Origin: Schmidtea nova
Taxonomy: Eukaryota
Reading direction: 5' to 3'
NCBI GenBank assembly: GCA_044892505.1
Contig: CM097883.1
Location: 439,890,001 to 439,954,000, forward strand
Length of the DNA: 64,000 nt
Position 1 is the stretch's first letter. The number at the start of each line of letters is the position of its first letter. Below, piece by piece: positions 1,300 to 58,880 of the stretch. Made by a program: the position numbers and the translations under genes. The notes beneath the pieces were generated by a model. The model ran no database searches. It was not told the DNA's origin and saw only the letters and a list, made by a program, of their open reading frames with translations.

Positions 1300-4200
1300 T
1301 TCAGTTAAAATATCAACTTAGTCAATGTATACACCTACTAGTGAAGGAGTAATACCAGATATGGATACCCTAAGTTCTTTTTCTATATTTAGCTGGGATC
1401 TGTATTTTGTTTTCAACGAAGCCACCGCAGAAAATCCGGTTTCGCAAAGATAAGATGTTGAAAATGGTAAAAGTATTTGGAAAGCTCTTCGTTTTAATGT
1501 CGCAAACTCGTCATCCAAACCAGCCCAAAATTCAAAAATCGATTTCTTATTAAATTGTCTTTTAATTTCACTGTTTGTTGTAGAATCAATAAAAGTTTCC
1601 TCTTCAGAAGTCGAGAGACATTGTGGAACATTGTGATATGGGTCCCTAACCCACTCGTAACTTGCTTGGATAGACGTATACGTTACTTTACATTTATAGC
1701 AAACAGTCGCATTTTATCAATAAAATTAAATGTACGAATATCGGACCGTTTTCATTATGACACTATAATTTTCGATAGATCAAAAAGGGGGGGGCTGCGC
1801 GAGAATATTTACGTTGGTAAACTGGGTCGCAATAACAGAAAGGTTGAGAAGCGCTGAGTTAAAGTATACTTTAACTAAAATAATTGGAGAAAGTATACAG
1901 AAATAAATTTATGAATACTTCCACTAGTTAGTGTATACACCTTCTACTGTAGATTAGTTAAAGTATTTCAATGGTTTGTTTATTCTCTTCTGTTTATCTA
2001 TTGTTTATTATCCGAGAAACTATCATTAATAAATTAGTGTTTTTTTCATAATATTTTTCGTAAATTTCGCAAGATTTCTATTTGCAGCAGACACAACTAG
2101 CACAAGTCTTTAAAATTTTGACGTTAGAATCATTCAACTAATACTATCACTAATGCGAATCAGTGGGTGTATACACTCACTATTTAATGAATGCATTGAC
2201 TAGATACATTATGTATCATTTGAAATAATGTATACTTTCACTAAAACAACAAGTGAAAGCATGCATCAACTAGTTAGTGTATACACTCACTGCAATTTAT
2301 ACTTTAACTATAACATATATAAAGAATTCTTACAATTTTAACAATAAATAAATGCAAAATATTTCAACATTAATTTTACTTACGGATATTCTTTCTCTGA
2401 AGCTTCTTAAAGTAACAACCCTGTTGATCAACAATGGGGAATTTTTAATTTTCAATAAATGGTCAAAATTTTCTTTGTTTTCAATAAGATCTCGAATTTC
2501 TTTGATTTCCACTTTAAATTCTTCGACTATTTTCTGAAGTTTCACTGATAATTTTTTCTAATGTGTACAAATTAATTTTGAAGTTAGATTTTAAATGGGC
2601 TGGAGTACTTGAACAATGTCTCGACCACTGATACCTTCAAATACTTCGATCAAATGTAATTTCGATTCTACAGTGGGACAAATGTCGAGACTGTTGTCAA
2701 TAATATTCCCCAGAACTTCTTCTAAGTTCTATAATAAAAATTATTGAATAAAATTATATTTATAAATTTATCTCGTGAGAGGAATTAATTAAAATAATAA
2801 AATAATAATTTTTTTGTAGAATATTATTTTAGTATTGGTTCCATAAATTCGTTTATGATCAGGACCGGCCGAACAAAAACGAGGCCCTATGCAAAATTTT
2901 CTCTCGGGGCCTTGTGTTGTCTTTTTCGAAGTTCATCATAAGAAATAAGACAATATTTGAATTTGTAAATATTTATTTATTTCACATATTAAAACAAAGT
3001 TTTTGTTTAATAATATTATTATTATAAATACCTATGGTATTTATAATAATTATTTAATTGATTTGGCTACATAGCCCTCCACCGAGGTCATGGAGTGACT
3101 TTTAGATTCTTGAAGATGGGCTGCTTTGAGTTTGTCTACCGATACTCGTAAGGTTCTTGTTGGCAATTGAATTTCAAATGTTTTAAAATCTGAGCTTCGG
3201 CTTATTACCTTGTATGGTCCGTCATATACAGGTTTGAGGGCGGTTCTTGATTCGGCTTTGAGCCACACGTGAGTAGATTCCTTCAACTCGCTTGGTAGGA
3301 ATGGTTTCCAATTTTGATTTCTTTTCCTTCTGACTATAACATCGCCAGGTAGTCTTCCATCAGTTCCAAAAACACTTTGACTTGGTGATACATTTGTTTC
3401 TTCAGAGACGACGTTGCGAAGTCCAAGTAGAATTGATGGAAGTTCATTTGCCCACCTTCTGGGGGCATCATCTGAGTGTGCCCTTATTGCTGTTTTGAGA
3501 GTTCTATGGAACCTTTCAACTTTACCGTTGCATTGAGGATGATATGGTGTGGTATGTCTGTGATCAGCATTGAATCTTTGACACATCTCTCTGAATGTAG
3601 CCGAGATAAACTGCTTGCCGTTGTCGGTGATAATAATTTCTGGAGCTCCATAGCGGCATATCCACTCGGTCTCCAAGGTTCTTGTTATTATTTCGCTTGT
3701 GATCTCAGAGATCGGGATGGCCTCCGGCCAAGAAGTATGCCTGTCAATAATAGTAAGAATGTATTTCTTGTTGTTTACCTGTGGTAGAGGACCAACAATG
3801 TCCACGTGAATAACTTTGAATTTTCCTAGATTTGGGAGTTTTTTGAGTGCTGACCTGGTGTGCCTGGTTATCTTGTTTTTCTGACATTTCTCACAGTTTT
3901 TGCACCATCTTCGAATTTGTGCCCGCATTCGTGGCCATACGTATTTAGACGATATTAATTTAATCGTCGCGTTTGCTCCCGGGTGGCATATATTGTGGAG
4001 CCGCTTGAATTCAACGAGTTGATGGCTTTCAGGCAGAACTATTCGTTGTGACCCTGTTGACATGTTCACAATCATTCCATCTTCATTCTTTTGAGTTTCG
4101 AACGAGGGAAAAGCTTCCAACATTTTTAAGAATGATGGCTCTCTCTGTTGTTGGATGATTTCAGTTTTTGTAATCTGTAGTGAGTGAATATTTGTTTCTT

Positions 4201-7200
4201 CATTGACATTGTCACTGGTGCCCATTTGCCTGGATAGGAAATCTGCAACCAAATTATCTTTGCCCCGTATGTGGTGGATCTTTACATCGAATTCACTTAT
4301 GAACTGGATCCATCGCCATTGTCTATTTGATGGCTCTTTCATTGTGTTTAGGTAAATCAGTGGTTTATGGTCGGTAAGCAATTCAAAGCTGTTGCCCTCG
4401 AGGTGGTGCTTGAAGTTTTTGATGGCCAGGTAAACTGCTAGCAGCTCTCTGTCAAATGTTGAATACTTGCGTTCCGTATTGTTGAGTTTTCTTGAAAAGA
4501 AACTGATGGGTGTGAGTTTACCATCGCAATTTCTGTGATTGAGACTTGCTCCGATGCCGATATCTGACGCGTCCGTGCATAAAATGAAAGTTTGCTTTGA
4601 ATTTGGGGGTGTCAACTCAACAATTTCTTGTAGTTTCTTTTTTGCCGCCTCGAAGGAGAGTGTATGTTGTTCCGTCCACAAAAACTTGCGTTTGTCTTTG
4701 ATGCTAACTGAAACTAGATCATGTAGTGGTGCCATTACTTCTGCCAGGTTTGGAGTTAGCCAGTGATAAAACGTTACTGCTCCTATGAATCTTCGGAGTG
4801 ATTTTGGGTCATTCGGGCGTGGACATAATGAAATTGCTTGAATCTTGTCTGATTGTGGTGATATTCCTGAACCTGAAATGTTAAATCCAAGGAATTTTAC
4901 TTCTGTTTGAGTGGTGCAGCACTTATTCTCATTGATGGACAAATTTGCGTCTTCCACGACTTTCCGAATGATTGATAAGTGATTAAGATGTTCTTCTCTA
5001 GACTTGGAGAAGATGATGATATCATCTATGTATGCTCTGGCAAATTCTCTGTACGGGCGTAGAAGTTTGTCCATGAATCGTTGAAAGGTTTGCGATGCAT
5101 TTTTTAATCCAAATGGCATTTTTAGATATTCATATAACCCAAATGGCGTGATTATAGCCGTTTTTGGTATGTCATTTACTGAGATGGGGATTTGATGGTA
5201 CGCTTTCTCTAAGTCGATGGTTGAGAATATTCGACTTCCTCCCAGTTGATGGAGCATATCGGTTATCCTGGGTAATGGGTATCTGTCTGACTTTGTTGCT
5301 GCATTCAAAAGTCTGTAATCTCCACAGGGTCGAATCGATCCGTCCTTCTTTTTTACGATGACCAATGGGGATGCCCAATTGCTCTTACTTTCTCGCATAA
5401 TGCCTTTTGCAATTAACTCATTGAATTCCTTTTCCACCACGTCTAAGTACTTCCCGCTTAGGCGTCTAGCTGATTGTGCAATCGGTGGGCATGCTGTCTC
5501 TATCTCCAATGCGTGCTCAAGAAGAATTGAGTTGATTTCGTCAGGATCAGTTGTTGCTCTGGCTTTTTTCGTATTTTCGGCGATGTAAATCTTAGCATTT
5601 CTGCAGTCAATTACAAATTTATGTTTGGCTAGAAAATCTGCTCCTAGAATCGGGCGGGTTACATCTGCCACCACAAAGCTCCATTTAAAGTTTTGCTCTA
5701 TGCCTGCAATCCTGAAATGTAGCACCTTTGAACCATACGTTTTGATGCTGCAGTTGTTGGCTGAAACAAGTTTAATAGGCCCGTCTCTAAGATCAGGTGT
5801 AAATGCATCTGCTGGGATGACGCTGACATCCGCTCCAGAATCCACGAGGAAATTGTGTGTTTTGTTGCTCTGGAGAACTGGCACAGTGAATATGGCTTGG
5901 ATTTTTGTCGACTGCTGAGAGTTGTCCAGGATCTCTGTCGTCGACATCAAAGAGATCCTTGACCTTTTCCCGAATATGACTTATTCCAGTGACATGGCTG
6001 TTCGCATTTTCGGGCATCCTTTCCAAATCTTCTGTGGAAATAGCATATTGGGTTTTCTGTTGACAGCTTATTGTATTGATTCAATTTGCTATTTGATTTT
6101 ATGGCGTTGATTTGATTTTGGAGATTTTCTATTTGTTGTTGATATTGGCTTTCGGTTGGTGGTAGATTTTCCACCTGAGATATAACATGATGTTCGATAC
6201 TCATGTGCACGTTTGCGATGTTTGCCAGTTCATCAATGTCTGCTTCTTTTGACACTAGCAAGTGTTGTATGTGAATTGGCATGCAATTTATAAATTGAAA
6301 TCTCAGGATCTGGCTTGTTTGTGGGTTTCCATTCGGTTCCATTAATTTGTAATTTCGCTTGAGTTCCCTGAGCAGCTGACTTGGTTTTCGATCACCAAGC
6401 TCTTGTTTCTGGAGTAATTTGTTAGCAGCCTCAGTTATCGATCCTTTTGACTCCCCGATGATTGCGTCTTTTAACGTCGAATACGGCAGTTTGATGTGTG
6501 GGTCCAATAGATCCGAATATTCTTCGAGGATTCGTGGTGGTAAACTGGTTAGCAAATGAAAATATTTTGACTTTTCATTTTTTATTGACGCAAGCTCGAG
6601 TGCAGCGTCAACCTGCTGGAACCACGCTACCACGTTGTCAAAGAAAATCGGCATCTTCATATGCATGTGACTACTTTCATGAGCCACGCTTCTGACACCA
6701 ATGTTGTCTTTTTCGAAGTTCATCATAAGAAATAAGACAATATTTGAATTTGTAAATATTTATTTATTTCACATATTAAAACAAAGTTTTTGTTTAATAA
6801 TATTATTATTATAAATACCTATGGTATTTATAATAATTATTTAATTGATTTGGCTACACCTTGAAAGTAATTTCATAAAAGAAATAATAATTTATTGCAA
6901 TTTGTTATTTATTACATTCAGAATAGTAAGGAAGACATTTAAATTAATAAAAATAAAATTAACATTTCAAACAAAAAACTTGATAATTATGACACATTGC
7001 TATTTATTTATTGCTATTTATTTAATGATTGTTTACATAGAAATATTTATATTATTTTATCAATTGTACTTAGATGGATTTAAAATTTTCGCACATGTTT
7101 TATTAGAAATTCAGTTTTAGTTTTACTATATAAATATATTAATATTACACTAGAAAAACTTTTTATTAATATAATTAATTATATGTTTTAAATTATTATA

Positions 7201-10200
7201 AAGTTATTTATGGTAAATTTTTTCAAAAACAAAAAATAAAAATAATTTATTATTAACATTTTATTTTAAAACTTGAACGACGCGGGGCATTGGAAGCGCG
7301 GGATCCTGTGCAGTCGACCTGTTTATGATAATTGGTTTGCTGTTATCATATCAAATGCGTTTTTGATCTATTAGACCAAGGGTTTGTAGAGTTTATGTGC
7401 CCTAAGGCATATTTCATTATATCGTTCGGTAACGGGTATCATAAATTTTTGTTGGACATAATTACTAATACACAATATTACTGACAACATTACATAACCG
7501 GCTCGTAATGTGTACTATTATTTTTATCTGTCTGTACACTATTGTGCATTTAAAATGTTTGCGTTTAGATTCTAATCTCATAAATCACTGTGTATGCGTG
7601 TATGTTTAAAATAAATTCATTAAAATGAGATTACTGCCAATCCTTATTTTTATGAAATGTAAAAAAATTCCATTCCGTCTTTGTGACACTTATCGAAAAT
7701 TTACTGTATAATAATATTAACTGTATAATAATTACTGTATAATTATTATTAATTATTATACAGTAATAATAATAATAATAATAACGAAAATTATTATTAT
7801 TATAATTATAATAATAATGCGTCTAACATATTCTATAAAAAACAAAATGTTACTGGCGTTTTAAAAATATAATTATAAAAAAAATTTTAACTCATTTTTC
7901 ATGCATCATACAACATTAGTCATTAAACATAATAACTATATGAAATAGTAAAATTTATATAGTATCAAACGCAATCAAGAAAATGCATATCATTGGCATT
8001 CCAAAAAATATTTTTGTTTTTATAAAATTAAACAAATTCAAAAAAATTAGAAATTTTCTTGATATGTTATGGTAATTGAAGCTTTAACGCCTTATCTTAA
8101 AGCTGATGATATTGGAATATATCGTTAATCTAATCCTCAAATGCACTGTGATGTCTTTTGACAACATAGACAATTTTATTCAATTAAAGTACGTGAAGTA
8201 AATTTTCAGTTGGTGCGCAGTTTTCTCGATTGACTACATACTGTATACAATTTATAAAACCTCAAAATATATATAAATGGCGTGAGTCATGCATTTAAGA
8301 GTTAAGGATTCAATATCAAAGACTTATAATTATTGAAAATTTTCATCTATGATTGAGTATAGAAAATGTTGAAGAAAATTTATTTAATGTAACTTATAAA
8401 GAAATTATAGTTCTGATGACTTTTTATTACTAAAGCGCACCAAATAGTATAACTAATAGCTGAAACTGGGATACTATTTTTATATTATCAATGATGCCAT
8501 TTGACAATATCCGCTTTTATCAGAAATTTTATTTTAAATTAAATTTAAATATTTTAATTTTTGTTTAAAATTTTTTTAATTAATATTTTTTTAAATGTAA
8601 AAAAATACGATTAGCATATTTTTGATGGTATAAAAGGATCTTCACATAGCAATGGCGTCTAACCCAATAAGGAGTAACTTAAATATAGAAATTAAAAGAT
8701 ATAAAATTACGGGAATTAAAATACAAAAAGAAGAGAAAAATATATAAAATACTTTCATGTTTATTTTATATACGTCTTTATAATGTTCGGGTTTATTAAA
8801 AAGGTAATGNNNNNNNNNNNNNNNNNNNNNNNNNNNNNNNNNNNNNNNNNNNNNNNNNNNNNNNNNNNNNNNNNNNNNNNNNNNNNNNNNNNNNNNNNNN
8901 NNNNNNNNNNNNNNNNNNNNNNNNNNNNNNNNNNNNNNNNNNNNNNNNNNNNNNNNNNNNNNNNNNNNNNNNNNNNNNNNNNNNNNNNNNNNNNNNNNNN
9001 NNNNNNNNNNNNNNNNNNNNNNNNNNNNNNNNNNNNNNNNNNNNNNNNNNNNNNNNNNNNNNNNNNNNNNNNNNNNNNNNNNNNNNNNNNNNCCCCACTG
9101 CTATGGAGATACTGGAATGTTGATAAATTGTCTTGATTGCTTTAACATTTTCCAGTAAAATCATAACTCAACAACATAAAATAGGGAAATGTGATACCTG
9201 TACATCCTTATTAAAACACTGGAAATTTATTCAAAAGATAAAAATAAATAATATAGACATAAAGAATAAATGAAACAAATTTTAAATGTTGAAATAAAAC
9301 TTTTTTCAATTACAAAAAAATTATTTTAAAATCTTACTTTAACAATGCTGCGAAATTCGAAAAATGCTCTTTCGAATATGGCAGAATTTTTCAAGTCAAG
9401 AATATCGGAAACTTTTTGGTAGAAATGCTTGGTAGCCATTTGAAACCGATTGTCGATTTCTGCAACCATTGAATTGAGTGTTCTTGTGGAAGCACCTCCG
9501 ATTTTCGCTACATCGGAGAGAGATCGAAAATGTTCCGAAGATTGCAACAATTCCACACAATCATTACATCTATTTAAATTTTAATTAATAATATTATTAT
9601 TATAGTAAATTTTCAATAAGTGTCACACTCAATAGCTATTTAGCTGGGTAAATAAAACCCTCAAAAAATGAATAAAAACTGATTCATTAAAGTTCGATAA
9701 CTGTCTTTTTTCATGTCACACTCAATAGCTATTTAGCTGGGTAAATAAAACCCTCAAAAAATGAAAAAAAACTGATTCATTAAAGTCGATAACTGTCTTT
9801 TTTCATGGACTGTTTTTTAAACCATTTTGATCCATCCTTTGTGATACTTATTAAAATTCTACTGCATTATTAGTATTATNNNNNNNNNNNNNNNNNNNNN
9901 NNNNNNNNNNNNNNNNNNNNNNNNNNNNNNNNNNNNNNNNNNNNNNNNNNNNNNNNNNNNNNNNNNNNNNNNNNNNNNNNNNNNNNNNNNNNNNNNNNNN
10001 NNNNNNNNNNNNNNNNNNNNNNNNNNNNNNNNNNNNNNNNNNNNNNNNNNNNNNNNNNNNNNNNNNNNNNNNNNNNNNNNNNNNNNNNNNNNNNNNNNNN
10101 NNNNNNNNNNNNNNNNNNNNNNNNNNNNNNNNNNNNNNNNNNNNCGATTGATTTTCTGATTCCTCGCATAGCGCTCAGTGTCAGCTGTCATCTCTGGAAT

Positions 10201-13200
10201 GTCTCCTCTCAGTGGCTATGAATCGTTTCCTCTCGATTTTATAAAATCCTTCGAGGCCGCGACGAGAATCCAGAAAGCTTTTGACTCACGATTGATATCT
10301 TTTTGACGAGGATCCTCTAAAAGTGTCCTGACGCTGATTAGAAGCTCCGAAAGAAAAACAGTCCTTGGAATTGACTTTATTGCCTCTCCAAAACTCTCTA
10401 AGAATCGTGACAGAGACAAGTCCTCTTTCGAGGGGCATAATTTTAGATAATCCTTGCGTCTTTTACTGATTATTTTCCTCGGATATGGTCTGTCTTTATA
10501 CGAATTTGGCCATTTGTCGAACTGAGATTGGAAAAAAGTGATTAAATTGTCTTTTCGATTTACGAGTTTTATTAGTATCATTTCCCTCAGATCCATCTTC
10601 TATATCATCAAGAATGAGTCTGGGATTGGACAAATGCCCGTTCGAAAATCATAACAAAGTTTACAAATTGGAGAATTTTGGAGTTTTTCTGTAAGAGGTG
10701 TTCGACCAACATTCAATTCGCACCAATAATCACTGTCAGATATCGGTGAATTAAATTGTAGCTTTTCTACAATTACTGAAGATCGCACTATATCAGAAAT
10801 GATTGGATCTCGCGAAGACAACACATTAATTAAATCATCCATAAGAGAGCTCTCAATTTTATTGACCACATTTCGTAACAACTCCTTATCAATAAAATCT
10901 TCGTCTTCGGCTAATTCTTCATTAATCATTTTAAATCAAATGAAATTAAATCTAAAATTCATTGATTTATTAATTCATCAAAATTACAAAATTATTTTCA
11001 TCCCAAAAGCACAGAGAAAACCGAACAAAAACTGTGACAAAACCCAATCTCAAAAATTCCTTTAAATTCTACTTAAAATTCACTCAGCAATTTTTAAATC
11101 CCCACCCTAAAAATTCATTAAAACTTACACAGTAAAACAAATCAATAGTTTTAATAAACCATTCCGAAAATTCGATAATTTCCAAATTTTATTATCATTT
11201 TTAAGCGAATTCAGCCACTCGCGTCTGTGTGCGCACACCAACACTAGACCTCATACCTCACTGTCGCGCACACAGACGCGTTGGAATCTGCCTGCTAGAT
11301 GATGGTGGAGGGAAATCTGACTAGTATGTCGAATAATTGGAATGTGTCGCAGCTGATGCAGGGCAGAGTTGGTGTGATTGATCCGACTGCTAGTGTCCAA
11401 ACCAGGCGGATAGAGATGAGATGCGTCTTGAATGCCCGGTATAGAATGGTCCTGGGGTATGAGGAATTACCCCTCGGCAGACAAGCTCTCCAAGTTTTAT
11501 ATAGTTTTCGATAAGACCGTCTAACGGCTTCCAGGCTCGCTCCACAATCTCTCACAGCAATCAAGCCCCGCCTTTTACTATTTTATTTTTATTTAATTAA
11601 TTTTTAAATATTTTAATAAGCGGGCGCGACCAATTATTATTATTATTATTATTTATTATTATTATCATCATTATCATTATAATTATCATTATTATTTTTA
11701 ATTATTTTTTTTAATTAGAATATACCTTTGAATGAAACGATTGAGACTATCAAAGCAAGGAGAATTTCTTGCTGGCCATTTACTTATTAGGCAAATTTCA
11801 TCAATTATATCATCCTCCGGATCGTTGGCGTTGGCATCAGATTTCAACCGATATGGAGATTTGAATGAATGTGGACCATAGACTTTTGTCCGCCACATTT
11901 CTCCCTTATTGGCATGGCGACTATAAATATAATGAAATTGAAATAAAACATAGAAAGAAATTTTTTTTATTGAATCAAGCGATAAAAGTGAATGCCAAGA
12001 AATTTCAAGTGGTGATAACGAAGCGATTTAAGTACATATTTTTAATAATAAAATACTTCATTAAAAGGTTTTATTAATATTGTGACATATATGTGAAGAA
12101 TAAATATCTAAAGATACTGTACCTTTTACATATTTAATTCTATCATTAATATATTATATCTTCTCCGTTTGATCTTTTATTTACGATTTCGTTTATCTTA
12201 ATTCTTTCATAGACCAAAATATGTGCTAAATATGAAACATTACTGATTTTAAGTCTGAAAGAATGAAGAAGAACGTAATTTTTAATTTTGATGCATCAAA
12301 ATGTTAGTTATTTATTAGTAAGAAATTCATTTATGTTCATCTGTTTTCAGACCATAGACCAGTGGTTCTCATCCTTTTTATGATGACGGCATCATAACGA
12401 AAATTTTTAACATTTAGGGCACCCCTCCATTTTTATTTTAAATTTCAGCTATGAAAATAACAACAGGTTTTGTATGTTCAATATTTTATTAAAAAGATTT
12501 TAAAAAATCTCTTTATAACGATAAAAAATGTAAAATTTTGCATATCTTCTTAATGTTAGGTCGCGTATTTGACCAATATACTCGTAACTCATTCTCAATT
12601 GAGATCAGTTTTTGTCTTTTCTTGTTCTTAATATTTACCAGTGTAGGAAATCCTGACTCGTGTAAATAGGATGTTGAAAATTGTAACAAAATTTTAATTT
12701 CCTTTTCATTGATATTTGGATATTTATTTATATTTATATATACACCCCGACCTACCAAAAGTCTCCAGTCAGGCAATTATTTACATATTGCAGTTTGTAA
12801 TGAAGGTCTGGAGTGTAAATATGAACAGCAATGGGAACAAATGTCACCAACACCTTCAACATGCTGTATGCGCACATATACACACGCATGCACTCACATA
12901 CAGAATATGACTACTCACACTAGACACACAACAGTGATAACATTGAGTCATGTTAATGAAGGATTGTCATTTTCTTAGAATATGGCTACTCGGAGATAGC
13001 TTACAGACTTTCAGAAAGGCATTATTTACGGATGTTACTTTTGTGGAAAAAGTCCGAGTCAAACTGTTGCATTGACTGGACATCCCAAAGGAACTATTAA
13101 CTACTTCATGAGGAAGTACCGCCAGGAGCAGACACATGTCAACAAGCAACGTTCAGGCCGCTCTAAACTTTTGAGCATCCGTACACAATGGCAGCTGAAG

Positions 13201-16200
13201 CGACTTGTGGAGGCTCATCGTCGGTTCCCCCTGTCCAAGTTAGTGCCCACATTTAACACTGGCGCTGTGCATGACAGCATGTCCACCATTCGTCGCGCAT
13301 TACATTTTCATGATTTCTGTGGCAGATACTGCGTAAGGAAGCCTTTGATTACAGAAACAATTCGTCTTCGTCGCTTGAAGTGGTGCCGGGAGAGAAGGAG
13401 TTGAACAGCAGAACAATGGCGCTCAGTCATTCGGAGTGATGAATCACGTTTCACTCTTTTCAAAACTGATGGATAACAATTCTGCTAGTGTCATGTAAAA
13501 GAATGATTTCACCATGACTGCATTCAGCCAACTGAGAAATATGTAGGAGGCTCTATTATGTTTTGGAGGCTTTTCTTAGCTAGTGGAACTGGCCCTCTAG
13601 TGAAGTGAAGCTATCACATGACGTCAGAGCAATACAGTGCCATTCTGGAAATGAGCTTGTTCTCTTTCTTACAGAAATTGAAGGGCTCATTTCCAACAGG
13701 ATAATGCCCCAATCCATACTTCGCACATTATGAATGAATTCTTTCTGCAGAACAGCTTCAACTTTTTGGATTGGGTTCCACAAAGCTCTGATCTGAATCC
13801 TATTGAGTTTCTGTGGGACATCCTTGGTAGCCGAGTTCGCAAAAGGATTCCCATTGCCCGTAACGCATCTGCACGAGGAATGGTCACACATCTCCCTTGA
13901 TTTCCTGACAAAAGTGGTCGATACAATGCCTAAACGAGTGCGCCTTGTTATCCAGATGAAAGGTAATATAACGAAGTATTAACTCTCTCAGCACTACAGA
14001 CATTCAGTATTCGTGTGTGTTTGTGACATTTGTTCTCATTGCTGTTCATTATAAACTGCAATATGTAAATAACTGCCTGACTGGAGNNNNNNNNNNNNNN
14101 NNNNNNNNNNNNNNNNNNNNNNNNNNNNNNNNNNNNNNNNNNNNNNNNNNNNNNNNNNNNNNNNNNNNNNNNNNNNNNNNNNNNNNNNNNNNNNNNNNNN
14201 NNNNNNNNNNNNNNNNNNNNNNNNNNATCGTATAAATTATGTGCATTTATCAAATTAAGGCATGCGACAAACATTTACCTCAAATCTCAACCGGAACTGG
14301 AAATTAGATAAGTGGTTAACTTTAAATGATTATTCAAAAACCAAAGTGACCATAATTCTTACATTAAATCTGCATTTTCCACTTCATGCTTTTGATTAAT
14401 CTCATCTACCGTATCTCGAGTGTCTAAATAAGTTCCTCGGAATTTGACGCAAATCTTCAAAGCGTTTTTAAAATTTATTAAGTTCTAAAATAAATAGATT
14501 TTAAGTAGTAATCTAAAAAAATGAAATTAAAAATACTTCTTTTGCATCTTTTTTCTGATAGTCCCCGAGAACTGAATATACTTTTTCAATTACTTTATTG
14601 GTAAAAATTTTCAGAAATCTGTATATATTTTCCTCTAAATGATAGTATCTAAAACAAAATTAAAAATGGAATAAAATCTCTGAAAAATAAAACACCCCAA
14701 GATAATATTGAATTAGTTATTATGAAATGTTCGTTTTTATGATTAAATTTTAAAGTTGGAGGGAATGCCCAACCTCTATTAATTTTATTATTTACTTAAA
14801 AGATTTTAGTACAAATTGAGACCGCACACCTTTCTAAAAATCAAATAAATAAGCGCATAAATTATCAATGTTTTAAGCAAGTTTACGATTCTGTTTGGTC
14901 GCATTCGTTACAGTGCTGTGCCGTATGTTGGACAATCTTGCTGTAAAGTCTCACAAGTAAATTAAAATAAGAATATCGGTAATGTTGAAGAATTTCTTTA
15001 AATTTAATTTGTAGCGGTTTTAAAATCGCAATCAACTTTTTTAGCAGCATTTCTTAAAGATTTGTGTTAAGATTGTTATTATAAATATCACAAATTTTTA
15101 AAATCTTTTCATCAAAAACTGATGGTCAATGTAGTGCCTCCGTTATTTATATGTTATTATATTATTTAATTAAATATCATATTATTTATATATTAAAATC
15201 AATTATCAATTTATTTATATAAAAAAAATCAATTTGTTTAAATCACAAAAAAATGGCACTTTTCACCTTATTTAAAAAAACCAAATGCAAAAAGGAATTT
15301 AAAGAAATGGAAGCTGAACCAATTAAAACCAAACGCAAACCACAAAGTTACCCATTGAATGTTGTAATGAAAAAGAATGCAAATCGGACAAATGAATTCA
15401 GTGATCACAAGAGGCGATTGAGACAATCAATCACCCCAGTGATTGCTACAAGCACAAAGATTGATATTTCTACCATTGATATACCAGAGCGCATTCAAGA
15501 CAGCTATTTCATGAAGGAAAAGAAGACGAAATCAACTGAGAAATCTGATGATATATTTGCAGCTAAGAAAGAACAATTTGTTTTATTAAATATATTTTCA
15601 GCTGCTATATTTATCTTATTAAATATATTCGCAGCAGCTAAAGTCAACGTCATATAAACTTCGTCAAAAGCAAAACTATTCCTATATTTTCGTTAAAGGA
15701 GAGCATTATCACAATTTGAATTAATGTTATTGTAAAACAAATAACACTGTTAAAAAATATTATTAAAAAAATTTTTAATAGATTTTGTATGTTACTTTTG
15801 TTGAGGTTTGTTTGAACAGACAAGAAATAAAATAAAAATCACAAAAACTAAGTGTAAATCAATAAAAACATCTAAATTCAATAAGTAATTGAAAAATTGA
15901 AAAATTAATTAAAAGGTTTAGAAAAATTAAAAATAAATATTTTGTGGGGGGAAACTTGTTTTTGACGGATGCCAAATGCTAAGACGAATCCGAATATAAT
16001 AATATAAAGCCAATGGGGAACCCAGGAAATAAATATTAAGATAATACAAAATTAAGAAAAGAAAATTAAAATAAAACATGAGTGGTATTAAAAAACCCGT
16101 GTCAACAACAAAATTATCAAATTACCAAAAGAAATTAGACAACTAAAGGAAGCACGAGTTGTCAACAAGTAACTCTATTACCGCAACCAGATTAACTATA

Positions 16201-19200
16201 GGGAAACCCCGGAGTAAAAAGAAAACATGAGCAGCAAGGGGAATCCGAATTTTAGAAGTATTAATCAGTTTTTGGCAAATTGATTGAAAGACGCCGCCCT
16301 GTAATTAAATAAAAATCAGGAAAATATTCATTTAGAAAAATACTCTAAAAGAAGGAAACAAATTCATTATTCTCGCAAGTTGGTCGAAGTGATATTTGAG
16401 TAAATTCAAAATTAACGAACATCTAAGAAATAGGAATTGTGAAGAAGATAGTATATGCAAATCTAATCAAATCTGCGTACTAGAAAGGACATTTTCCGAT
16501 TGAGACATTTACCCTATGGAAACAAAAAGCTGAAGGCATAATAAGTGTTATTGACAAGTGTATATTTTGCGCTAGAATAAATAAAAGTAATGGTGTTGGA
16601 CGATTTTGATTGATTTTAAATAAGAACACGAGGAGTCAGACATTAATACCAACTTGAAATAAAATCCCAACACTTTTAACACAGTTTATGCTTCACTAAA
16701 TACGAGTGACTAACTTAGTAATTCTTAGTGGATAAACCTTTGTAACTATAGAACTAAGAAAAGCGTTGAAGACAATTTTGCCATGTTGTTCATAAAATGA
16801 ATTAGATGCTTGAATTTGTACGGAAGCGGTCTGCCGAATATTGACCATAAGGAAGAAATGCAAATTTTAATCCATTCAATTTTTTAGATAAAATTAAAAA
16901 AATATAAGTTATGGCGTTGTCATTAGACGAAGGCGGCCATTTCCGATGAATCCATATAGAGAGATTTTCTTGCAAATTTTGACAGGTTTAAATTGTATTA
17001 TATTTTACTTATAGTACCCCTCAAATTATGTGAATGGTGCTTTCAATTTTTTTCAATTTTTTTTCCTCCAAATTTTCAGATTTTTTTACTTTTTGTTCTA
17101 TGAAAATCAGATTTTGCGATTGCGAATTTGGTAATTTTTTGCTGGGAATTTCATTTTATACAGTGAAGTTGGCAATGATGTGAGTTTATTGCCAAAGATT
17201 TGGCGGTTTTTTTTTCGCTAACAAATAAATGCCCACATAAATTTTCTGCCGCTCATGTTGTGAAAAAAAATTAGAGGGAACGTTGATGATAACATAATTA
17301 TGTAACCTAAATGAGATAATTAATTAATTTTCACTTCAGCTGATATTTAATCGAATATTACTGCATTTTGCATAATTTTCGTTTCGAAAATTTTCACAGA
17401 TTATTTCAAACACTTTTGTCAGAACCCTAAAGCAACTGTTACTTATATTCAAAAGTCAATTTGTGGAAAAATACGTTTTATTCTCCAATTAATTATTAAT
17501 TAATAAATAACAAAATAAGCCTTTGCTGCAAAATTTTATTCAGTGAAAGTTTTCAATTAAAAAATGGATAAAATATATTCGCGCATACATTTTGTTTGAT
17601 TTACATAAAATTACTTCATCACACAAATTTTATTTTTTACACTTAAATTTAGAAAATGCCTTTATATTGGCACATTATTTTACTACATAGCACACAAATT
17701 TAGAAAGTTATTAATATTAATCATCCCGGGTGTTCTATGCAAGATATTTATATTATGTTTAAATTATAGACAATATCTTTTTAAAATTTTACATTATTAT
17801 AGGGTAAATAGCAAGATCAAAGATTAACTGGACTTTAGCATCAAATGATAATGAATTGCAGAATGAGATTGCAACTGGCCGCTGGAGCATAAGAACCTCC
17901 CGAATAGGCAAACGTTGTTCAAAGGAATTTTATCCAGAAAATATTATACTAAAAGTCAATTATGGATTTGAAAGTTGGAAAGCTGTTATCTGTTCTTGCT
18001 GGAATTATGTTAAGACCAAAAAAATGCGTTTACGTCTATCTATATCTGAAAGAGAAAGGAAAGTTGGCTTTAATCAATGTGACCCTGCTTAGTGAAAGAA
18101 AAAAGCGTGGTAGGCCAAAGAAAGTAAAGGCTAATACTAGTTTAACAAGGCAACTTGTCTAATAAATGGTTTCTTAAACATTTTAATATATTTTTTGCAT
18201 CCATTTTTTATATTGTCACTCTTATAAAATTTAAGACAGTAATTAATGATGTTAGAGCTCAAAATCTTGCATAGAACCCTCGGAACAATTAATATTAATA
18301 ACTTTCTAAATTTGTGTGACTTGTAGTAAAATTATGTGTCAATATAAAGGCATTTTATAAATTTAAGTGTTAAAAATAAAATTTGTGTTTGATGAAGTAA
18401 TTTTATGTAAATCAAATAAAATTGATGTGCGAAAAATACCCAAACATTAATTAAATATTATATAATTAATAATTAATAATTAACAAAATAAGCATTTGCT
18501 TCAAAAGTTTATTTGGTGCAAATTTTCGACTTTAAAATAATCCTTATTAATCTTCTATCAAAGACTGATAAAGATTATTTTTTAATGGTTGGGTATTTTT
18601 CGAACATAAATTGTATTTTATTTGCATAAAATTACTTCATCACACACAAATTGTATTTTTTCCACTTAAATTTATAAAATGCATTTATATTGACTTTCTA
18701 ACTTTCTAAATTGGTTTGCCCTGTGGTAAAATAGTGTGCCAATATAAAGGCTTTTTCTAAATTTAAGTGTCAAAAATAAGATGTGTGTGATGAAGTAATT
18801 TTATGGAAATCAAATAAAATTTATGTGCGAATATATTTTTATCCTTTAATTAATGCTGCTACCAAGAAACCCCTCCCCTTTTATTATCTTAGGACAGAAG
18901 CCATAATACGACCAAGATAAATAGTTTCATATTATATAATGTTTTAAATTAATTTAAATTTAACTTAACATTTTATTATCATTAACCTCTCTTATTTTCA
19001 TCTTTTATCTTTTCGTTTCTGTCAGAAATTTTCATATTTTTTATATATACAGAATTGAAAAAGTCTGTTCCGAGAATTTGAGTAACTTTTAAAAAATATT
19101 TTGATCTACATCGTGACAAATTATAAGTAGAATATTATGTTAATTTATTTACGCTTCGTCATCTTTCTAAATGTCAGCTGCTATTTTATTTACTAGATTA

Positions 19201-21184
19201 GTTGTAAAGTTGTGAAATATTGCCATTGGAAGTTTATATAAAATATCATATTACTTGTTAAATTTCCATAGTAAAAACATTAATCTCAATAATGCGGGAA
19301 TCAGAGAAGCGATCTTTTCAGTTTTTTCAGCTTCATCAAATTTTTGAAACCATTCAGCAATCGGATTTAAATATTTTAACATTTCCTTCGTATAGAGTTT
19401 TTCTTCGCTAATTTCTATAATGAGATTGACAAACGAGTGATAGTATTGAGAATCCACCCGTTCCAAGTTTGATAAAATTTCTTTCGTAATTGGTAAATGC
19501 AATTGCTTCTGAACATTGACAACCGTTTCAAGATGGGACTGCCATAATCCTATTTCAGAAAGAGGAGTGTTCGTTTCGTCATTTTGCTTCTTAATTATAT
19601 TCTCTCTTAGGAGTATTATCTAAAATAATTTTATTTATCATTAGTAATATAAAATATTTAGTATTATTACTATTATTATAAGTAATATTATTTTAACTTT
19701 TTAAAAAATTATTTATTCAAATTCTAATATAATAAAAATTCGCATCAACGGTTTATCTTGTCACTTAATAATTGTGTAACATTAAATAAATCCTGCAATA
19801 AAAAATTACTACTATTACTNNNNNNNNNNNNNNNNNNNNNNNNNNNNNNNNNNNNNNNNNNNNNNNNNNNNNNNNNNNNNNNNNNNNNNNNNNNNNNNNN
19901 NNNNNNNNNNNNNNNNNNNNNNNNNNNNNNNNNNNNNNNNNNNNNNNNNNNNNNNNNNNNNNNNNNNNNNNNNNNNNNNNNNNNNNNNNNNNNNNNNNNN
20001 NNNNNNNNNNNNNNNNNNNNNNNNNNNNNNNNNNNNNNNNNNNNNNNNNNNNNNNNNNNNNNNNNNNNNNNNNNNNNNNNNNNNNNNNNNNNNNNNNNNN
20101 NNNNNNNNNNNNNNNNGCCAACTCAGTAAATTCAACATAAACGCGATATATTTCGATTGTATAACAATCTTCGTCAGGCAGCAATCAGGACAATCAATAA
20201 TAAAATAGAAAATATGCCAAATCTAAACAAATTAATTAATAATAATCATTTCCATACTATATATAAATTTTAATTTTAAAAAATTTTAATTTAATTTATT
20301 TTATTACAAAAAAAATTTTTATAAAAATTAATTAATAAGCAAACAACATTTTACATAATACAGCATACGTATTTTTTTTAAAAAATAAAATTTAATTTAA
20401 TAAAATTTTAAAATTCAACATAAAATTTACAAATTTAAAAAAATATTAAAATGTTCACTAAAAACAAACATAATTATACCACAAACACAATTCGCAACAT
20501 TCAACATCCAGTTACTTAAACACATTCAAAATATCCGTGGAACGGGCAACTTGATCATTTATTTTTTGATTTAAATATCTAATCAACAATGCCTCACAAG
20601 GTACTCGTTCCCAATAATTACTCAAACCTTTTGAAATAATTTTAAAATCAGAGATACCAATTTGTTTACTGACACATTTCCTAAAATGATCACTAATATT
20701 AGTCAGTCCTTTTAGTCGACAATGCTCAAGAACTCGGATGCAGAGGTGACGGACAGTCTCTCCATTGTATGTGGCATTACACCCATTACATGAAAATTGC
20801 CCGTCCCACGGATATTTTGAATGTGTTTAAGTAACTTAACGTTGAATGTTGCGAATTGTGTTTGTGGTATAATTATGTTTGTTTTTTGTGAACATTTTAA
20901 TTATTTTTTTTAATTTGTAAATTGTTTGTTGAATTTTAAAATTTTATTAAATTATATTTTATTTGTTAAAAAATGAATGTTGTATTATGTAAAATGTTGT
21001 TTGCTAGTATGGAGATGATTATTATTAATTAATTTGTTTAGATTTGGCATATTTTCTATTTTATTATTGATTGTCCTGATTGCTACCTGACGAAGATTGT
21101 TATACAATCGAAATATATCGCGTTTATGCTGAATTGACTTAGTTGGCGTTTTTCTATTATTAAATCATTGCCACGTTTTTTTGA

Positions 21185-31159: not shown

Positions 31160-31450
31160 TTTTAGGGTTGCTTGTTGACATGTGTCTGCTCCTGGCGGTA
31201 CTTCATCAGGAAGTAGTTAATAGTTCCTTTGAGATAGACAGTCAATGCAGTAGTTTGACTCTGACTTTTTCCACAAAGGTAACATCGTAAATAATGCCTT
31301 TCTGAAAGTCTGTAAGCTCTCTCCGAGTAGCCATATTCTAAGAAAATGACAATCCTTCATTAACATGACTTACTGTTATCACTGTTGTGTGTCTGGTGTG
31401 AGTAGTCATATTCTATGTGCGCCTGTGTGTGAGAGCTTGCGTATGTTCAT
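31160..31450 (-). mobile_element. Fragment of the Tc1 family seen at 12743-14086
   Basis: Reverse complement of about 12870-13150. Confidence 0.8.
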
Positions 31451-38660: not shown

Positions 38661-41600
38661 CCTGTTCATGATGCGCCACTTCTTCCTTCCCAAAATATAA
38701 CTTATTATAATGAATACATTGGATAATTCACAGCCTGTTGAATTTATGCTCATCAATGGATATCAGCTTATTGCTATTCACAAGTTACAACTACTGTTTA
38801 CATGAATTGAATTAATTGCAACGAGACTCACAAAATGCGCTCTGTCACACATAATATTATCGAGATGTAGATAGAACATGTTTGTCGAAACTATGGCCCA
38901 GAAGACATTTTTTCTTGACCAAATAAGTCGTTATCTTTTCAATAAATTTAATTAAATTAATCAAAGTTGTTACAAATTTTAATTCAGTATTCTAACTGAA
39001 AACTTAAAATTAAGTAAAACATTTGTTTATTTTTCTCATTTAATTCCTTGGTTTTGTTTATACTCAAAAATGTAGCTACAAGGGATTTGGAGCCTGATTA
39101 AAAAAAAGTTTTTAGAAACTAACAGTTTCATTATTCTCATTAAATAAATTTTAATTTAATAATTTCATTTTTTTAATTGTTAAACTTTAATTATATATGA
39201 AATTTTAAAAATTAAAGCAATAATAGAGGATAATATATAAACCTGAAATTTTATTTAATATTTGATACTTAAACAATTTATTTCTATAATTAAAAATTGC
39301 AATAAATATTCAAAGGAAGCTGCAGTTTAAACCCTATATCATNNNNNNNNNNNNNNNNNNNNNNNNNNNNNNNNNNNNNNNNNNNNNNNNNNNNNNNNNN
39401 NNNNNNNNNNNNNNNNNNNNNNNNNNNNNNNNNNNNNNNNNNNNNNNNNNNNNNNNNNNNNNNNNNNNNNNNNNNNNNNNNNNNNNNNNNNNNNNNNNNN
39501 NNNNNNNNNNNNNNNNNNNNNNNNNNNNNNNNNNNNNNNNNNNNNNNNNNNNNNNNNNNNNNNNNNNNNNNNNNNNNNNNNNNNNNNNNNNNNNNNNNNN
39601 NNNNNNNNNNNNNNNNNNNNNNNNNNNNNNNNNNNNNNNNNNNNNNNNNNNNNNNNNNNNNNNNNNNNNNNNNNNNNNNNNNNNNNNNNNNNNNNNNNNN
39701 NNNNNNNNNNNNNNNNNNNNNNNNNNNNNNNNNNNNNNNNNNNNNNNNNNNNNNNNNNNNNNNNNNNNNNNNNNNNNNNNNNNNNNNNNNNNNNNNNNNN
39801 NNNNNNNNNNNNNNNNNNNNNNNNNNNNNNNNNNNNNNNNNNNNNNNNNNNNNNTGGGTTTTCCCGGGACGTTCTGCAATTAGTCAAATTATTAATGAAT
39901 TTATTGATGCCCCGGGTTCCCCACGTAGCTCGGGTCTCCCATTAGGTAATTAATGATTTTAATTAATTTGTATTTTCTTAATTCTTCTTTCTGGGGGTTC
40001 CATTTTTAATTTTATATACCCATATTTGAATTCGTCTCATCATTTGACATCCTCCCATACCAGTTTCCCCCTCTCAAACTTTATTTTGAATTTTTATAAA
40101 TTTTTAATTAGTGTTTGCACTTTTTTTGTTTTTAACTTTATATTTCAAGCCTGTTTAGGCAACCCCAACATATTTATTATTAAACGGATACTTATAATGA
40201 AAAAAACAAAGATTAATTATTTATTATTTTGGGTTATTAATGAATTATTTGGAGATAAAACTGATTCCACGTGAAAACTCATAAAGCACCATAAGCTTTA
40301 TTTTCAAATTATATACACAACTAGTCAATTCACACTTTAATTTATTGGATCTATACTCAACAATATAGGTAGGTATCCAAAAAAGTAATTTTCTATGCAA
40401 ATTGGGCAAAGTTAAACAAAAGAAAACACTTTCACTTTAACCTTTTTTTTAAATATCGTTAACGGTGTATTGGTCATTTGTTCTAGGGTATTGTGCTACG
40501 CGTTTACCTTACCTATACACACATTAATATTTAAAATCTCTCGCACGTGCACCCACAATCATTCTCAGACAATGTGTTGGAACTGTATACTGTGGCAGTG
40601 AGTACTAGTAGGCAGGTGACTCTTCACTTTCGATACGCTCTCATCAGTCTCTCCTTGTTAGCATTTTAATTCCTTTCTACACCTCTCAGCATATCCCATT
40701 TTACGATAAATTATCTCAACTTCCTACCACCAAAATGCTAATACGCCAAAAAATAGAAGACCGATAAGATATATACATTAATACATCTCACATTCAAACG
40801 TTACAATTTCGTCCAATAACTCAAATTCCTCTAAACCGTCCAAATAGTCTATCTGTTTCGTCAATTGTGTCTTAAAGTTCGCCATTTTTTGTCGTTTCAT
40901 TTTTTGCCACTGTTTGGTACTCAAGCGGTTCCTCTCAGACATTATGATCATACTCCTGGATGAGATGTTTTATTATATGGATAAATTGAGTCCACTGTTC
41001 GAAAACCATTTTCCTAGAGTTAGTGGTCGTACTCTCCGGACAAGTTCTTTCTCGATGATCGATCTAGTCATGAGTGCTATACAGTTCTTTGACTCCATGA
41101 GTAGTTTTTCCCCTCACAATGTCTGCTCTAATAATTCGTTGATGCAATCCTTTTTTTAAGACTGGATAGAAAATCTTCGAATTCCAGGATTCGTTTCTTT
41201 ATTTTCCCTTTGATCTGTTCATTACAGATCGTCTGCTTCCGTGAACACTTACACGCGGAAATCTTTTTTTCATTTTGTAGAGCCATATAAGAAAAAATCC
41301 TTAACGACGTCTTATAAGACTTTCTGTCTATCATATTCTCGACGACTGGACTACTCGTTTGCCCCCTTTATTCATTATACTTTCACACGCTAGACAGGTT
41401 CTTTGATACATTATATTTTTATAAAAACTTCCTTGTCTTACATTTCTCTACAACCTTTAACAATCTTTAACGACGAATATTTATTACATCCAAAACAACA
41501 GATAAATAATCATTATATCATCTGTCCTAACATTTTCAATATATTGGCTGACTTGTTTCGATTTTTCGATAGTTTGCGACTAGACGACACGAAAAAGCCT

Positions 41601-49680: not shown

Positions 49681-50261
49681 CAATATATAAGTTATTTATG
49701 CAATACTACTGCATTGTTTAATTTTTGTAAAACCCTTATCTTCAGAAAAAATTCTTTAGGTTGTGGAGGAGTTTACTGTATAATTATTATTTTATTTATA
49801 CAGTATTAGCCACAGCGCTACGGGTATTAATTGAATCCATAAGACAAATTATAATAACACGTTTTATTCATTAAAAATCCAAACCTTATTAAAACAAATT
49901 ATAATGTTAATTTGTTTGAGGAGTTTCTAAAAATAATAATTAATGTATAAGTAAGGATTTCAACATACAATCAAACATGCACAGCATCATATCTTTATAT
50001 TTTAATACAAATTACAAAAACGCCTCACATCCCCCCTTTTTTAAAAATCTTTAACCACTCAATATTTCTCGTGACGGCACTTCCATTTTCCAATTTTATT
50101 TCATAACTTCGATCATGAATCTTTTTAGTAATTACACCTGGACCCATGTATCTATTATCACCTTTATTTCGAACATTTACTTTGATCAACACGCAATCTT
50201 CAATTTGAAATTCGCGATTTGTCGTCTGATTGATTTTTCCTTCTTCCGAAATTTCTGAGAA

Positions 50262-58505: not shown

Positions 58506-58880
58506 GATATAATTTTTAATTGAATTTCTGTATATAAAAATATTATACTAATATATAAATAACGGAGGCACTACAATTATTATTATTATTATCATTATCA
58601 TAATTATCTTTTTGTTTCACCTTTTTTCACCTTTTTTCACTTGTTTTCACTCTTTTTTATTATTAAAGATCAAAGTTTCTTTAAATAAGTACACATAATA
58701 AGTATTTATTTAAAGAAATTTTGATCTATAGTCATANNNNNNNNNNNNNNNNNNNNNNNNNNNNNNNNNNNNNNNNNNNNNNNNNNNNNNNNNNNNNNNN
58801 NNNNNNNNNNNNNNNNNNNNNNNNNNNNNNNNNNNNNNNNNNNNNNNNNNNNNNNNNNNNNNNNNNNNTTTGATCTTTTT

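What the first reader, a model, noticed from the sequence alone, without database searches (positions are those of the whole stretch)
11221..11640. Spliced-leader exon cut 5 nt before its donor and fused to a foreign GC-rich segment: candidate SL-targeting or SL-derived retroelement
Seen: on the minus strand, 11528-11492 reads GCCGTTAGACGGTCTTATCGAAAACTATATAAAACTT, then switches to GGAGAGCTTG... with no ATATG|GT donor and no Sm site. Upstream are two GC motifs in AT-rich DNA (GGTCGCGCCCGC and AAGGCGGGGCTTG). Known: the recalled S. mediterranea SL exon is 42 nt and ends in ATG; site-specific non-LTR elements target SL genes in nematodes (NeSL-1) and trypanosomatids (CRE1/SLACS/CZAR). Inference: this is either an SL RNA gene with its promoter interrupted by a site-specific retroelement 5' end, a SINE-like element headed by SL, or the relict SL of a retroposed trans-spliced mRNA.
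Basis: partly seen in the sequence, partly recalled or inferred. Interest (0 to 1): 0.82.

Follow-up and report, generated by a model that had tools for sequence, protein, structure and literature searches.

The report
Broken spliced-leader RNA gene copy
This looks like a dead copy of the small gene that supplies the spliced leader to flatworm messenger RNAs: it keeps its upstream flank and the first 37 letters of the leader, then runs into about 290 letters of unrelated GC-rich DNA, and nothing here shows that a leader-targeting jumping gene caused this.

Summary
On the minus strand, 11528-11492 is a unique 37-mer followed by GC-rich DNA, with no splice donor and no Sm site.

The 37-mer really is spliced-leader (SL) sequence. 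A scan with its first 22 letters found two unrelated mRNA contigs from one metatranscriptome, an Omp85/SAM50-like gene and a thiolase. Both start with the same 41-43-nt leader ending in ATG. The window matches that leader at 33 of 37 positions, the first 23 exactly. It stops exactly 5 nt before the leader's end.

The 287-nt body (11491-11205, 53% GC) is non-coding and matches no Rfam family. It has no relatives in any collection I could search and ends in a perfect 15-bp hairpin. No RT or endonuclease ORF, poly(A) tail, target-site duplication, leader remainder or second copy was found. The locus lies at the 5' end of a dynein heavy chain gene, on the same strand.

Best reading: a non-functional, 3'-truncated SL RNA gene copy fused to foreign, transposon-like DNA. 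A leader-specific mobile element remains possible. It cannot be tested here, because no genome of this species was searchable.

Interest is moderate to low.

The parts
11620..11631 (-). Distal GC-only 12-mer (GGTCGCGCCCGC), 92-103 nt upstream of the leader start. Possibly a distal promoter element of an snRNA-type gene (inference).
   Evidence: It is unique in the window and 92% GC, flanked by DNA of 2-6% GC.
11575..11619 (-). AT-only spacer (2% GC) between the two GC blocks.
11529..11574 (-). Proximal GC-rich block (57% GC) directly abutting the leader start. It sits where a proximal sequence element of an SL or snRNA gene would be (inference, not tested).
11492..11528 (-). Spliced-leader-like 37-mer: the first 36-37 nt of a 41-42-nt leader exon. 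The last 5 nt (ending in ATG) and the donor are missing.
   Evidence: It matches the leader shared by the two unrelated mRNAs L001 and L002 at 33 of 37 positions, the first 23 exactly.
11205..11491 (-). GC-rich body (53% GC, 287 nt) of unknown origin. It appears non-coding, single-copy in the window and transposon-like in composition.
11220..11280 (-). Terminal hairpin of the body: two perfect 15-nt arms (11280-11266 and 11234-11220) with a 31-nt loop. The loop holds a donor-like GAG|GTATGA at 11257|11256.
   Evidence: inverted repeat I2; fold z-scores -2.45 and -3.1.
11698..11898 (-). Upstream exon-like ORF (66 aa), same strand and same frame as the downstream ORFs, with a donor-like G|GT at 11726|11725. 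No relatives were found.
10216..10929 (-). Downstream same-strand ORF chain. It starts with an ATG at 10929, about 275 nt after the block, and has an acceptor-like AG at 10953-10952. The pieces are 10600-10929 and 10216-10596. They are probably the N-terminal exons of the dynein gene, and no relatives were found.
9326..9556 (-). Exon matching dynein heavy chain N-terminal region 1. It identifies the host gene.
   Evidence: PF08385 DHC_N1, E = 1.5e-7, 30.8 bits against a cut-off of 28.3, profile positions 230-296.

Best explanation
This is a non-functional, 3'-truncated copy of a spliced-leader RNA gene. What survives is the gene's upstream flank and the first 37 nt of the leader exon. The flank consists of a GC block at -46 to -1 and a GC 12-mer near -100, both set in almost pure AT DNA. 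The last 5 nt of the exon, the GU donor, the Sm site and the 3' stem-loops have been replaced by about 290 nt of unrelated, non-coding, GC-rich DNA. Its composition matches the transposons of this genome, and it ends in a perfect 15-bp hairpin. The most likely history is a DNA-level event in an SL gene copy: insertion of a short mobile-element fragment, or a break repaired with foreign filler, followed by loss of the gene's 3' half. The copy cannot donate a leader, because it has no donor and cannot assemble an Sm core. The following are shown: the SL identity of the 37-mer, the abrupt switch, the absence of donor and Sm site, the lack of coding or known-RNA signal in the body, and the position at the 5' end of a dynein heavy chain gene. 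The following are inferred: that the upstream GC blocks are the SL gene's promoter, that the body derives from a mobile element, and the order of events.
For: The 22-mer scan returned two mRNA contigs that start with one shared leader and then diverge. Their ORFs are Omp85-like and thiolase. The window aligns to that leader at 33 of 37 positions and stops 5 nt before its end. There is no donor or Sm site where they should be. The first 110-140 nt do not fold better than shuffles, with z-scores of -1.2 and -0.96. No Rfam family matches. The sharp composition steps are GC 0.57, 0.35 and 0.53 inside against 0.02-0.23 outside. Other blocks of at least 45% GC in the window are mostly transposons. 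The body's ORFs have no Pfam hit and no relatives. Published precedent exists: 6 of 54 schistosome SL gene copies have aberrant flanks and are suspected pseudogenes (PMC2770079).
Against: I could not compare the locus with intact SL RNA genes of the same species. The promoter reading of the upstream blocks is therefore untested, and so is the claim that nothing after nt 37 is SL-RNA-like. The near-intact 37-mer argues against a very old relic, yet no insertion hallmarks survive. A lone SL gene copy inside a dynein gene is unexpected if SL genes are clustered, as reported for Schmidtea polychroa (PMC10899757). Copy number in the genome is unknown.
Confidence: 0.5

Rival explanations
1. The GC-rich body is the 3' end of an SL-exon-specific mobile element, either a 5'-truncated copy or an internally deleted non-autonomous derivative. 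The element would be related to NeSL, R5 or LIN non-LTR retrotransposons and would insert between leader nt 37 and 38. The junction would then recur in other SL genes of the genome.
For: The orientation and layout fit: promoter, then partial leader, then foreign DNA. The body ends in a strong hairpin, like the structured 3' UTRs that such elements use. Planarians carry a diversified R5/LIN lineage of the NeSL clade that targets 28S, tRNA-Arg and tRNA-Glu genes (PMC4640811). Most non-LTR copies are 5'-truncated, so a missing RT does not exclude this.
Against: No RT or restriction-like endonuclease domain lies in or near the block. No SL remainder follows the body's 3' end above background. No target-site duplication is above chance. 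There is only one copy in 64 kb. No SL-targeting family is reported for flatworms in the papers I could search. The locus is inside a dynein gene rather than an SL cluster.
Confidence: 0.2
2. This is a relic of a retroposed trans-spliced RNA. An SL-capped transcript was reverse-transcribed and inserted, leaving the leader at its 5' end.
For: The leader sequence sits at the 5' side of a GC-rich block in AT-rich DNA. An AT-only 13/15 direct repeat flanks the block at 11580-11594 and 11186-11200. An AATAAA lies just after the block.
Against: The leader lacks its last 5 nt, whereas trans-splicing joins the complete exon. The 46 nt directly upstream of the leader start are GC-rich and contiguous with it. 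There is no poly(A) tail. The flanking repeat is not above chance in this low-complexity DNA. The body has no ATG-initiated ORF beyond a few codons and no protein relatives.
Confidence: 0.1
3. This is a live gene. The retained SL-type promoter drives an SL-headed RNA of about 310 nt that ends at the hairpin. Alternatively it drives an alternative first exon that is cis-spliced from the donor-like GAG|GTATGA in the hairpin loop to the acceptor just before the dynein start codon.
For: The 37-mer and the upstream GC blocks look undecayed. A hairpin sits at the 3' end. The strand is the same as the dynein gene, and the block ends about 275 nt upstream of the gene's ATG. A donor-like site lies at 11257|11256 and an acceptor-like site at 10953-10952.
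Against: The whole block does not fold better than shuffles on the sense strand, z = -0.66. No Rfam family matches. No conservation or expression data exist. Donor- and acceptor-like strings are common by chance.
Confidence: 0.07
4. The junction is a chance resemblance or an assembly artefact such as a chimeric join.
For: There is a single copy, and the window has seven N runs, so the assembly or masking is imperfect.
Against: A 23-nt exact and 33/37 overall match to a real leader cannot be chance: 0 of 100 shuffles matched even with 3 mismatches allowed. The nearest N runs are more than 1 kb away, at 9880-10144 and 14087-14226.
Confidence: 0.04

Closest known systems
SL RNA pseudogenes and aberrant SL gene copies, for example the 6 of 54 Schistosoma mansoni SL copies with aberrant flanks (PMC2770079)
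   Same: Leader-gene sequence sits in a non-canonical context and cannot make a working SL RNA.
   Different: Here the break is sharp, at nt 37 of the exon. The gene's whole 3' half is replaced by a defined 287-nt GC-rich block with a terminal hairpin, and the copy lies inside a protein-coding gene.
SL-exon-specific non-LTR retrotransposons: NeSL-1 (Caenorhabditis) and CRE1/CRE2, SLACS and CZAR (trypanosomatids) (PMC3636483, PMC4640811)
   Same: The layout is promoter, then partial leader, then foreign DNA in the same orientation. The interruption falls inside the leader exon.
   Different: No RT or restriction-like endonuclease is present. The leader remainder or a target duplication does not follow the foreign DNA. 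No recurrent junction was shown. The foreign piece is only 287 nt.
Planarian R5/LIN lineage of the NeSL clade, which targets 28S rRNA, tRNA-Arg and tRNA-Glu genes (PMC4640811)
   Same: The host group is probably the same. It is a lineage known to switch between multicopy small-RNA gene targets, which makes an SL target plausible.
   Different: No SL-targeting member has been reported. I could not compare the body with LIN or R5 3' ends, because no repeat library was available.
Relict spliced leaders in genes made by retroposition of trans-spliced mRNAs, as described in dinoflagellates (from my own knowledge of that literature; see also PMC2606063 on dinoflagellate SL)
   Same: Leader sequence is encoded in the genome outside a functional SL RNA gene.
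   Different: Those relics lie in front of coding sequence and are cut at their 5' side. Here the cut is at the 3' side, the upstream flank looks like a promoter, and the body is non-coding.
Dada DNA transposons that target multicopy small RNA genes (PMC8869645)
   Same: They are a mobile element class that inserts at fixed positions inside snRNA and tRNA genes.
   Different: No transposase is present, and no terminal features or target duplication were recognised here. SL genes are not a reported Dada target.

Membership tests
Functional flatworm SL RNA gene | A complete leader exon identical or near-identical to the leader found on mRNAs | tested here: not met
   The window matches a real leader (L001/L002) at 33 of 37 positions, but the last 5 nt ending in ATG are missing. 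The species' own leader could not be obtained.
Functional flatworm SL RNA gene | A GU splice donor directly after the exon | tested here: not met
   The next GT dinucleotides are at +47 and +59.
Functional flatworm SL RNA gene | An Sm-binding site and stem-loops within an RNA of about 110 nt | tested here: not met
   There is no RAU3-6GR site between 11528 and 11189. Folds of the first 110 and 140 nt are no better than shuffles.
Functional flatworm SL RNA gene | An upstream snRNA-type promoter shared with other SL genes | not testable with these tools
   GC blocks lie at -46 to -1 and -103 to -92, but no intact SL gene was available for comparison.
SL-specific non-LTR retrotransposon (NeSL-1, SLACS/CZAR/CRE) | An ORF with reverse transcriptase and a restriction-like endonuclease | tested here: not met
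   Pfam finds nothing in any ORF of 10799-12077 or in the downstream ORF chain. The only hit nearby is dynein DHC_N1. A 5'-truncated copy would lack these domains, so this does not exclude derivation from such an element.
SL-specific non-LTR retrotransposon (NeSL-1, SLACS/CZAR/CRE) | The rest of the target SL gene, with or without a target duplication, follows the element's 3' end | tested here: not met
   Local alignment of the leader to the 300 nt downstream scores no better than 33-67% of background tiles. No duplication is above chance.
SL-specific non-LTR retrotransposon (NeSL-1, SLACS/CZAR/CRE) | The same junction recurs in many SL gene copies | not testable with these tools
   There is one copy in the window. 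No genome of this species is in any searchable collection.
SINE or non-autonomous retroposon | A head derived from a small RNA with an internal promoter, an A-rich or simple-repeat tail, and target-site duplications | tested here: not met
   No tRNA, 5S or 7SL signal was found. There is no tail. The flanking 13/15 AT repeat is not above chance.
SINE or non-autonomous retroposon | Many dispersed copies | not testable with these tools
   It is single in 64 kb, which is uninformative for a genome of this size.
Retroposed trans-spliced mRNA (relict SL) | A full leader joined to a coding body, with a poly(A) tail and target duplication | tested here: not met
   The leader is incomplete, the body has no relatives and no real ORF, and there is no tail.
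Any curated structured RNA family (Rfam 15) | A covariance-model match at or near the gathering score | tested here: not met
   There are no hits at gathering score in the window and only chance-level hits (E = 4.7-9.8) in the block.

The most novel reading that the evidence does not exclude
The SL-gene promoter and leader head were not merely broken but re-used. The locus would be transcribed from the SL start at 11528 into an SL-headed RNA. That RNA would either persist as a capped non-coding RNA of about 310 nt ending at the hairpin, or be cis-spliced from the donor-like site in the hairpin loop onto the first coding exon of the dynein heavy chain gene. The second route would give that mRNA a genome-encoded, hard-wired partial leader instead of a trans-spliced one.
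Probability: 0.05. Interest if true: 0.7.

Novelty: new member of a known kind. Interest (0 to 1): 0.38.

Why it matters
If this is only a broken SL gene copy, it is ordinary genome debris. It is mainly useful as an annotation warning, because leader-like sequence in a genome is not always an SL gene.

It would matter more if the nt-37 junction recurs across the genome. That would reveal the first leader-targeting mobile element in flatworms. It would also extend the known target switching of the planarian R5/LIN lineage to SL genes, in parallel with the independent cases in nematodes and trypanosomatids.

As a by-product, the two metatranscriptome contigs give a tool-verified flatworm-type leader that can serve as a search probe.

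Tried and rejected
**Reference leader from the literature.** No held paper prints any 10-13-mer of the 37-mer, as DNA or RNA. Zayas 2005 and Rossi 2014 are not held. The S. polychroa supplement shows the SL alignment only as an image.

**Known RNA (RNase P or MRP, 7SK, U3, telomerase RNA, hammerhead, miRNA, tRNA).** There are no Rfam hits and no tRNA. By eye, neither strand carries a telomere-template-like permutation of the TTAGGG repeat.

**Coding exon.** The 89-aa and 71-aa ORFs have no Pfam hit, no relatives in the word search and no exact record.

**Bacterial, plasmid or phage origin of the 'foreign' DNA.** There is no blastn match and no exact 25-26-mer in prokaryotic or viral contigs.

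**The 37-mer as an insertion flanked by a duplication.** The similarity between the sequences just before and after the 37-mer is not above chance: 346 of 2000 shuffles reached it.

**A hidden leader remainder downstream.** The shared 8-mers and an ATG|GT about 60 nt past the block's end score at background level.

**Solo LTR or MITE.** By eye there are no terminal inverted repeats or TG...CA ends, and the block has no similarity to the LTRs or transposons in the window.

**Donor organism of L001 and L002.** The thiolase is only 59-70% identical to any named protein, so it is a metazoan that cannot be placed further.

**Relatives of the neighbouring ORFs.** The word search on the 109-aa piece and the full HMMER search on the 126-aa piece were both blank.

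Full report
**Observation**

The 37-mer is unique in the 64-kb window even with three mismatches allowed, and none of 100 shuffles produced a match. The two upstream GC motifs are at 11631-11620 and 11574-11562, and each is unique.

Composition changes in sharp steps:

| Segment | Coordinates | GC |
|---|---|---|
| Upstream flank | 11697-11632 | 6% |
| Distal 12-mer | 11631-11620 | 92% |
| Spacer | 11619-11575 | 2% |
| Block abutting the leader start | 11574-11529 | 57% |
| Leader-like 37-mer | 11528-11492 | 35% |
| Body | 11491-11205 | 53% |
| Downstream | 11204-10930 | 23% |

The window as a whole is 29% GC.

**Is it really spliced leader?**

No held paper contains any 10-13-mer of the 37-mer. 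The two primary planarian SL papers are not held. The one supplement that shows an SL alignment holds it as an image.

I therefore scanned public metagenome contigs with the 22-mer at 11527-11506. It hit two contigs of one sample, each at the extreme 5' end of the mRNA sense strand. L002 carries a poly(A) tail. L001 encodes an Omp85/SAM50-like protein and L002 a thiolase.

The two contigs share their first 43 nt and then diverge completely. That is the signature of a trans-spliced leader, here 41-42 nt long and ending in ATG. In L001 that ATG opens the reading frame.

The window's 37-mer is identical to this leader over its first 23 nt. With one gap it matches at 33 of 37 positions. The alignment ends exactly 5 nt before the leader's end.

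The donor organism is a metazoan that I could not place. The thiolase is at most 70% identical to any protein in the database, and no planarian name appears among the listed hits.

**What is missing**

There is no GT where the exon should end. The next GT dinucleotides are at +47 and +59. No Sm-type site (RAU3-6GR) lies anywhere in the GC-rich block. The first is at 11188-11182, at a background frequency of 1.4 per kb.

The first 110 and 140 nt fold no better than shuffles. No Rfam family matches at gathering score in the window, or beyond chance level in the block. This locus cannot make a working SL RNA.

**The body**

The 287 nt after the junction contain an 89-aa open frame on the minus strand and a 71-aa one on the plus strand. 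Neither has a Pfam hit. The 89-aa frame, the only one I put through the word search, has no relatives. Neither has an exact record. The only ATG on the sense strand of the body opens a frame of a few codons.

The body has no other copy and no similarity to the transposons of the window. It has no match in plasmids or phages. It has no exact 25-26-mer in prokaryotic or viral contigs.

It ends in a hairpin with perfect 15-nt arms (11280-11266 and 11234-11220) and a 31-nt loop. That hairpin folds better than shuffles, with z-scores of -2.45 to -3.1. The block as a whole does not: z is -0.66 on the sense strand and -1.87 on the other.

Most other stretches of at least 45% GC in this window are transposons. 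The body's composition is therefore transposon-like, but that is all I can say about its origin.

**Context**

On the same strand, an exon at 9556-9326 matches dynein heavy chain N-terminal region 1 above Pfam's cut-off. Between it and the block lies a chain of same-frame ORFs starting with an ATG at 10929. Upstream there is another same-frame exon-like ORF (11898-11698) with a donor-like site at 11726|11725.

These pieces have no relatives. The word search on the 109-aa piece and the full HMMER search on the 126-aa piece were both blank. That fits the poorly conserved dynein tail.

I searched the pieces one by one by reference. N runs were left untouched.

The block therefore lies in the first intron or the immediate 5' flank of a dynein heavy chain gene. 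It is not in front of an element's ORFs.

- **SL gene interrupted by a site-specific retroelement.** The layout fits. Planarians are known to carry NeSL-clade R5/LIN elements with diversified small-RNA gene targets (PMC4640811). However, no RT or endonuclease is present, no leader remainder follows the body and no duplication is above chance. Recurrence of the junction cannot be tested.
- **SL-headed SINE-like element.** There is no tail, no internal-promoter-type head, and one copy in 64 kb. The AT-only 13/15 direct repeat flanking the block is not above chance.
- **Relict leader of a retroposed trans-spliced mRNA.** This fits worst. The leader is incomplete, the 46 nt upstream are GC-rich and contiguous with it, the body is non-coding, and there is no poly(A) tail.

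**Best explanation**

This is a dead, 3'-truncated SL RNA gene copy. It keeps its upstream flank and leader nt 1-37 and is fused to foreign, transposon-like DNA. The most likely cause is insertion of a short element fragment, or filler capture at a break, with loss of the gene's 3' half. Confidence is about 0.5.

Shown:
- the SL identity of the 37-mer;
- the sharp junction;
- the missing functional parts;
- the non-coding, unmatched body;
- the position in the host gene.

Inferred:
- the promoter role of the upstream blocks;
- the mobile-element origin of the body;
- the order of events.

SL copies with aberrant flanks are documented in schistosomes (PMC2770079).

Rivals and their confidences:

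| Rival | Confidence |
|---|---|
| Recurrent, leader-specific element | 0.2 |
| Retroposed RNA | 0.1 |
| Live SL-headed RNA or hard-wired first exon for the dynein gene | 0.07 |
| Artefact | 0.04 |

**Novelty and interest**

As it stands, this is a new example of a known kind, an SL pseudogene or interrupted small-RNA gene. No leader-targeting element has been reported in flatworms in the papers I could search. The stronger reading would therefore be a real addition, but the present evidence does not reach it. Interest is 0.38.

**Limits and declarations**

No genome or transcriptome of the window's species was reachable, so copy number, promoter conservation, expression and orthology are untested.

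I began to recall a human RNase MRP RNA sequence as a comparator, and I recalled part of a published planarian leader. I stopped both times.

All letters sent to tools came from the window or from L001 and L002.

Noticed in passing
window 2915-6858 (minus strand): A Ty3/gypsy-type LTR retrotransposon. Its two 157-nt LTRs are identical (2915-3071 and 6702-6858). It has a 259-aa gag-like ORF (DUF7041) and a 966-aa pol ORF with protease, RT, RNase H and integrase domains. Both ORFs are open as listed. It probably sits in an intron of the dynein gene.
   Followed up: partly
window 49804-55256: A second LTR-type element, bounded by 227-nt direct repeats that are 97% identical. The 496-aa ORF at 50262-51752 has RNase H and integrase domains but no RT domain in the same frame. 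I did not examine its integrity further.
   Followed up: no
window 12897-13990 and 31167-31419: A Tc1/mariner-like element. The ORF at 13072-13404 has a Tc3-type transposase HTH domain. Its end is repeated in inverted orientation 18 kb away at 92-96% identity (I3 and I6). I did not assess coding integrity.
   Followed up: no
L001 (Ga0247628_1005999) and L002 (Ga0247628_1006774): Two metatranscriptome mRNAs, Omp85/SAM50-like and thiolase, share a 41-43-nt 5' leader ending in ATG. This is a flatworm-type spliced leader from an unidentified metazoan. Its 5' 23 nt are identical to the window's 37-mer.
   Followed up: yes
window 9859-11898 (minus strand): Four exon-like ORFs lie in one reading frame across 2 kb and are separated by two in-frame stops, an N run and the ~770-nt gap (11697-10930) that holds the block. 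The sequence around the stop at 10600 could be a small intron of about 68 nt (GTAAAC...ATAG). The 126-aa piece has no relative among 1.84 billion representative proteins.
   Followed up: partly
window 8810-9092, 9880-10144, 14087-14226, 19820-20116, 39343-39854, 58737-58868, 59289-59419: Seven N runs of 131-512 nt. I left them as they are, and two of them interrupt the dynein gene region.
   Followed up: no
window 9621-9693 and 9714-9786: A 73-nt direct repeat, 99% identical, with copies spaced 93 nt apart, in an intron-like stretch (D18).
   Followed up: no
window 17570-18839 and 20117-21147: Clusters of long inverted repeats (arms of 113-180 nt, 81-97% complementary) that suggest foldback or MITE-like elements (I1, I2, I4, I5, I7).
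   Followed up: no
window 11575-11697: The DNA around the distal GC 12-mer is almost pure (AAT)n-like microsatellite at 2-6% GC, so the 12-mer stands alone as a GC-only island.
   Followed up: partly
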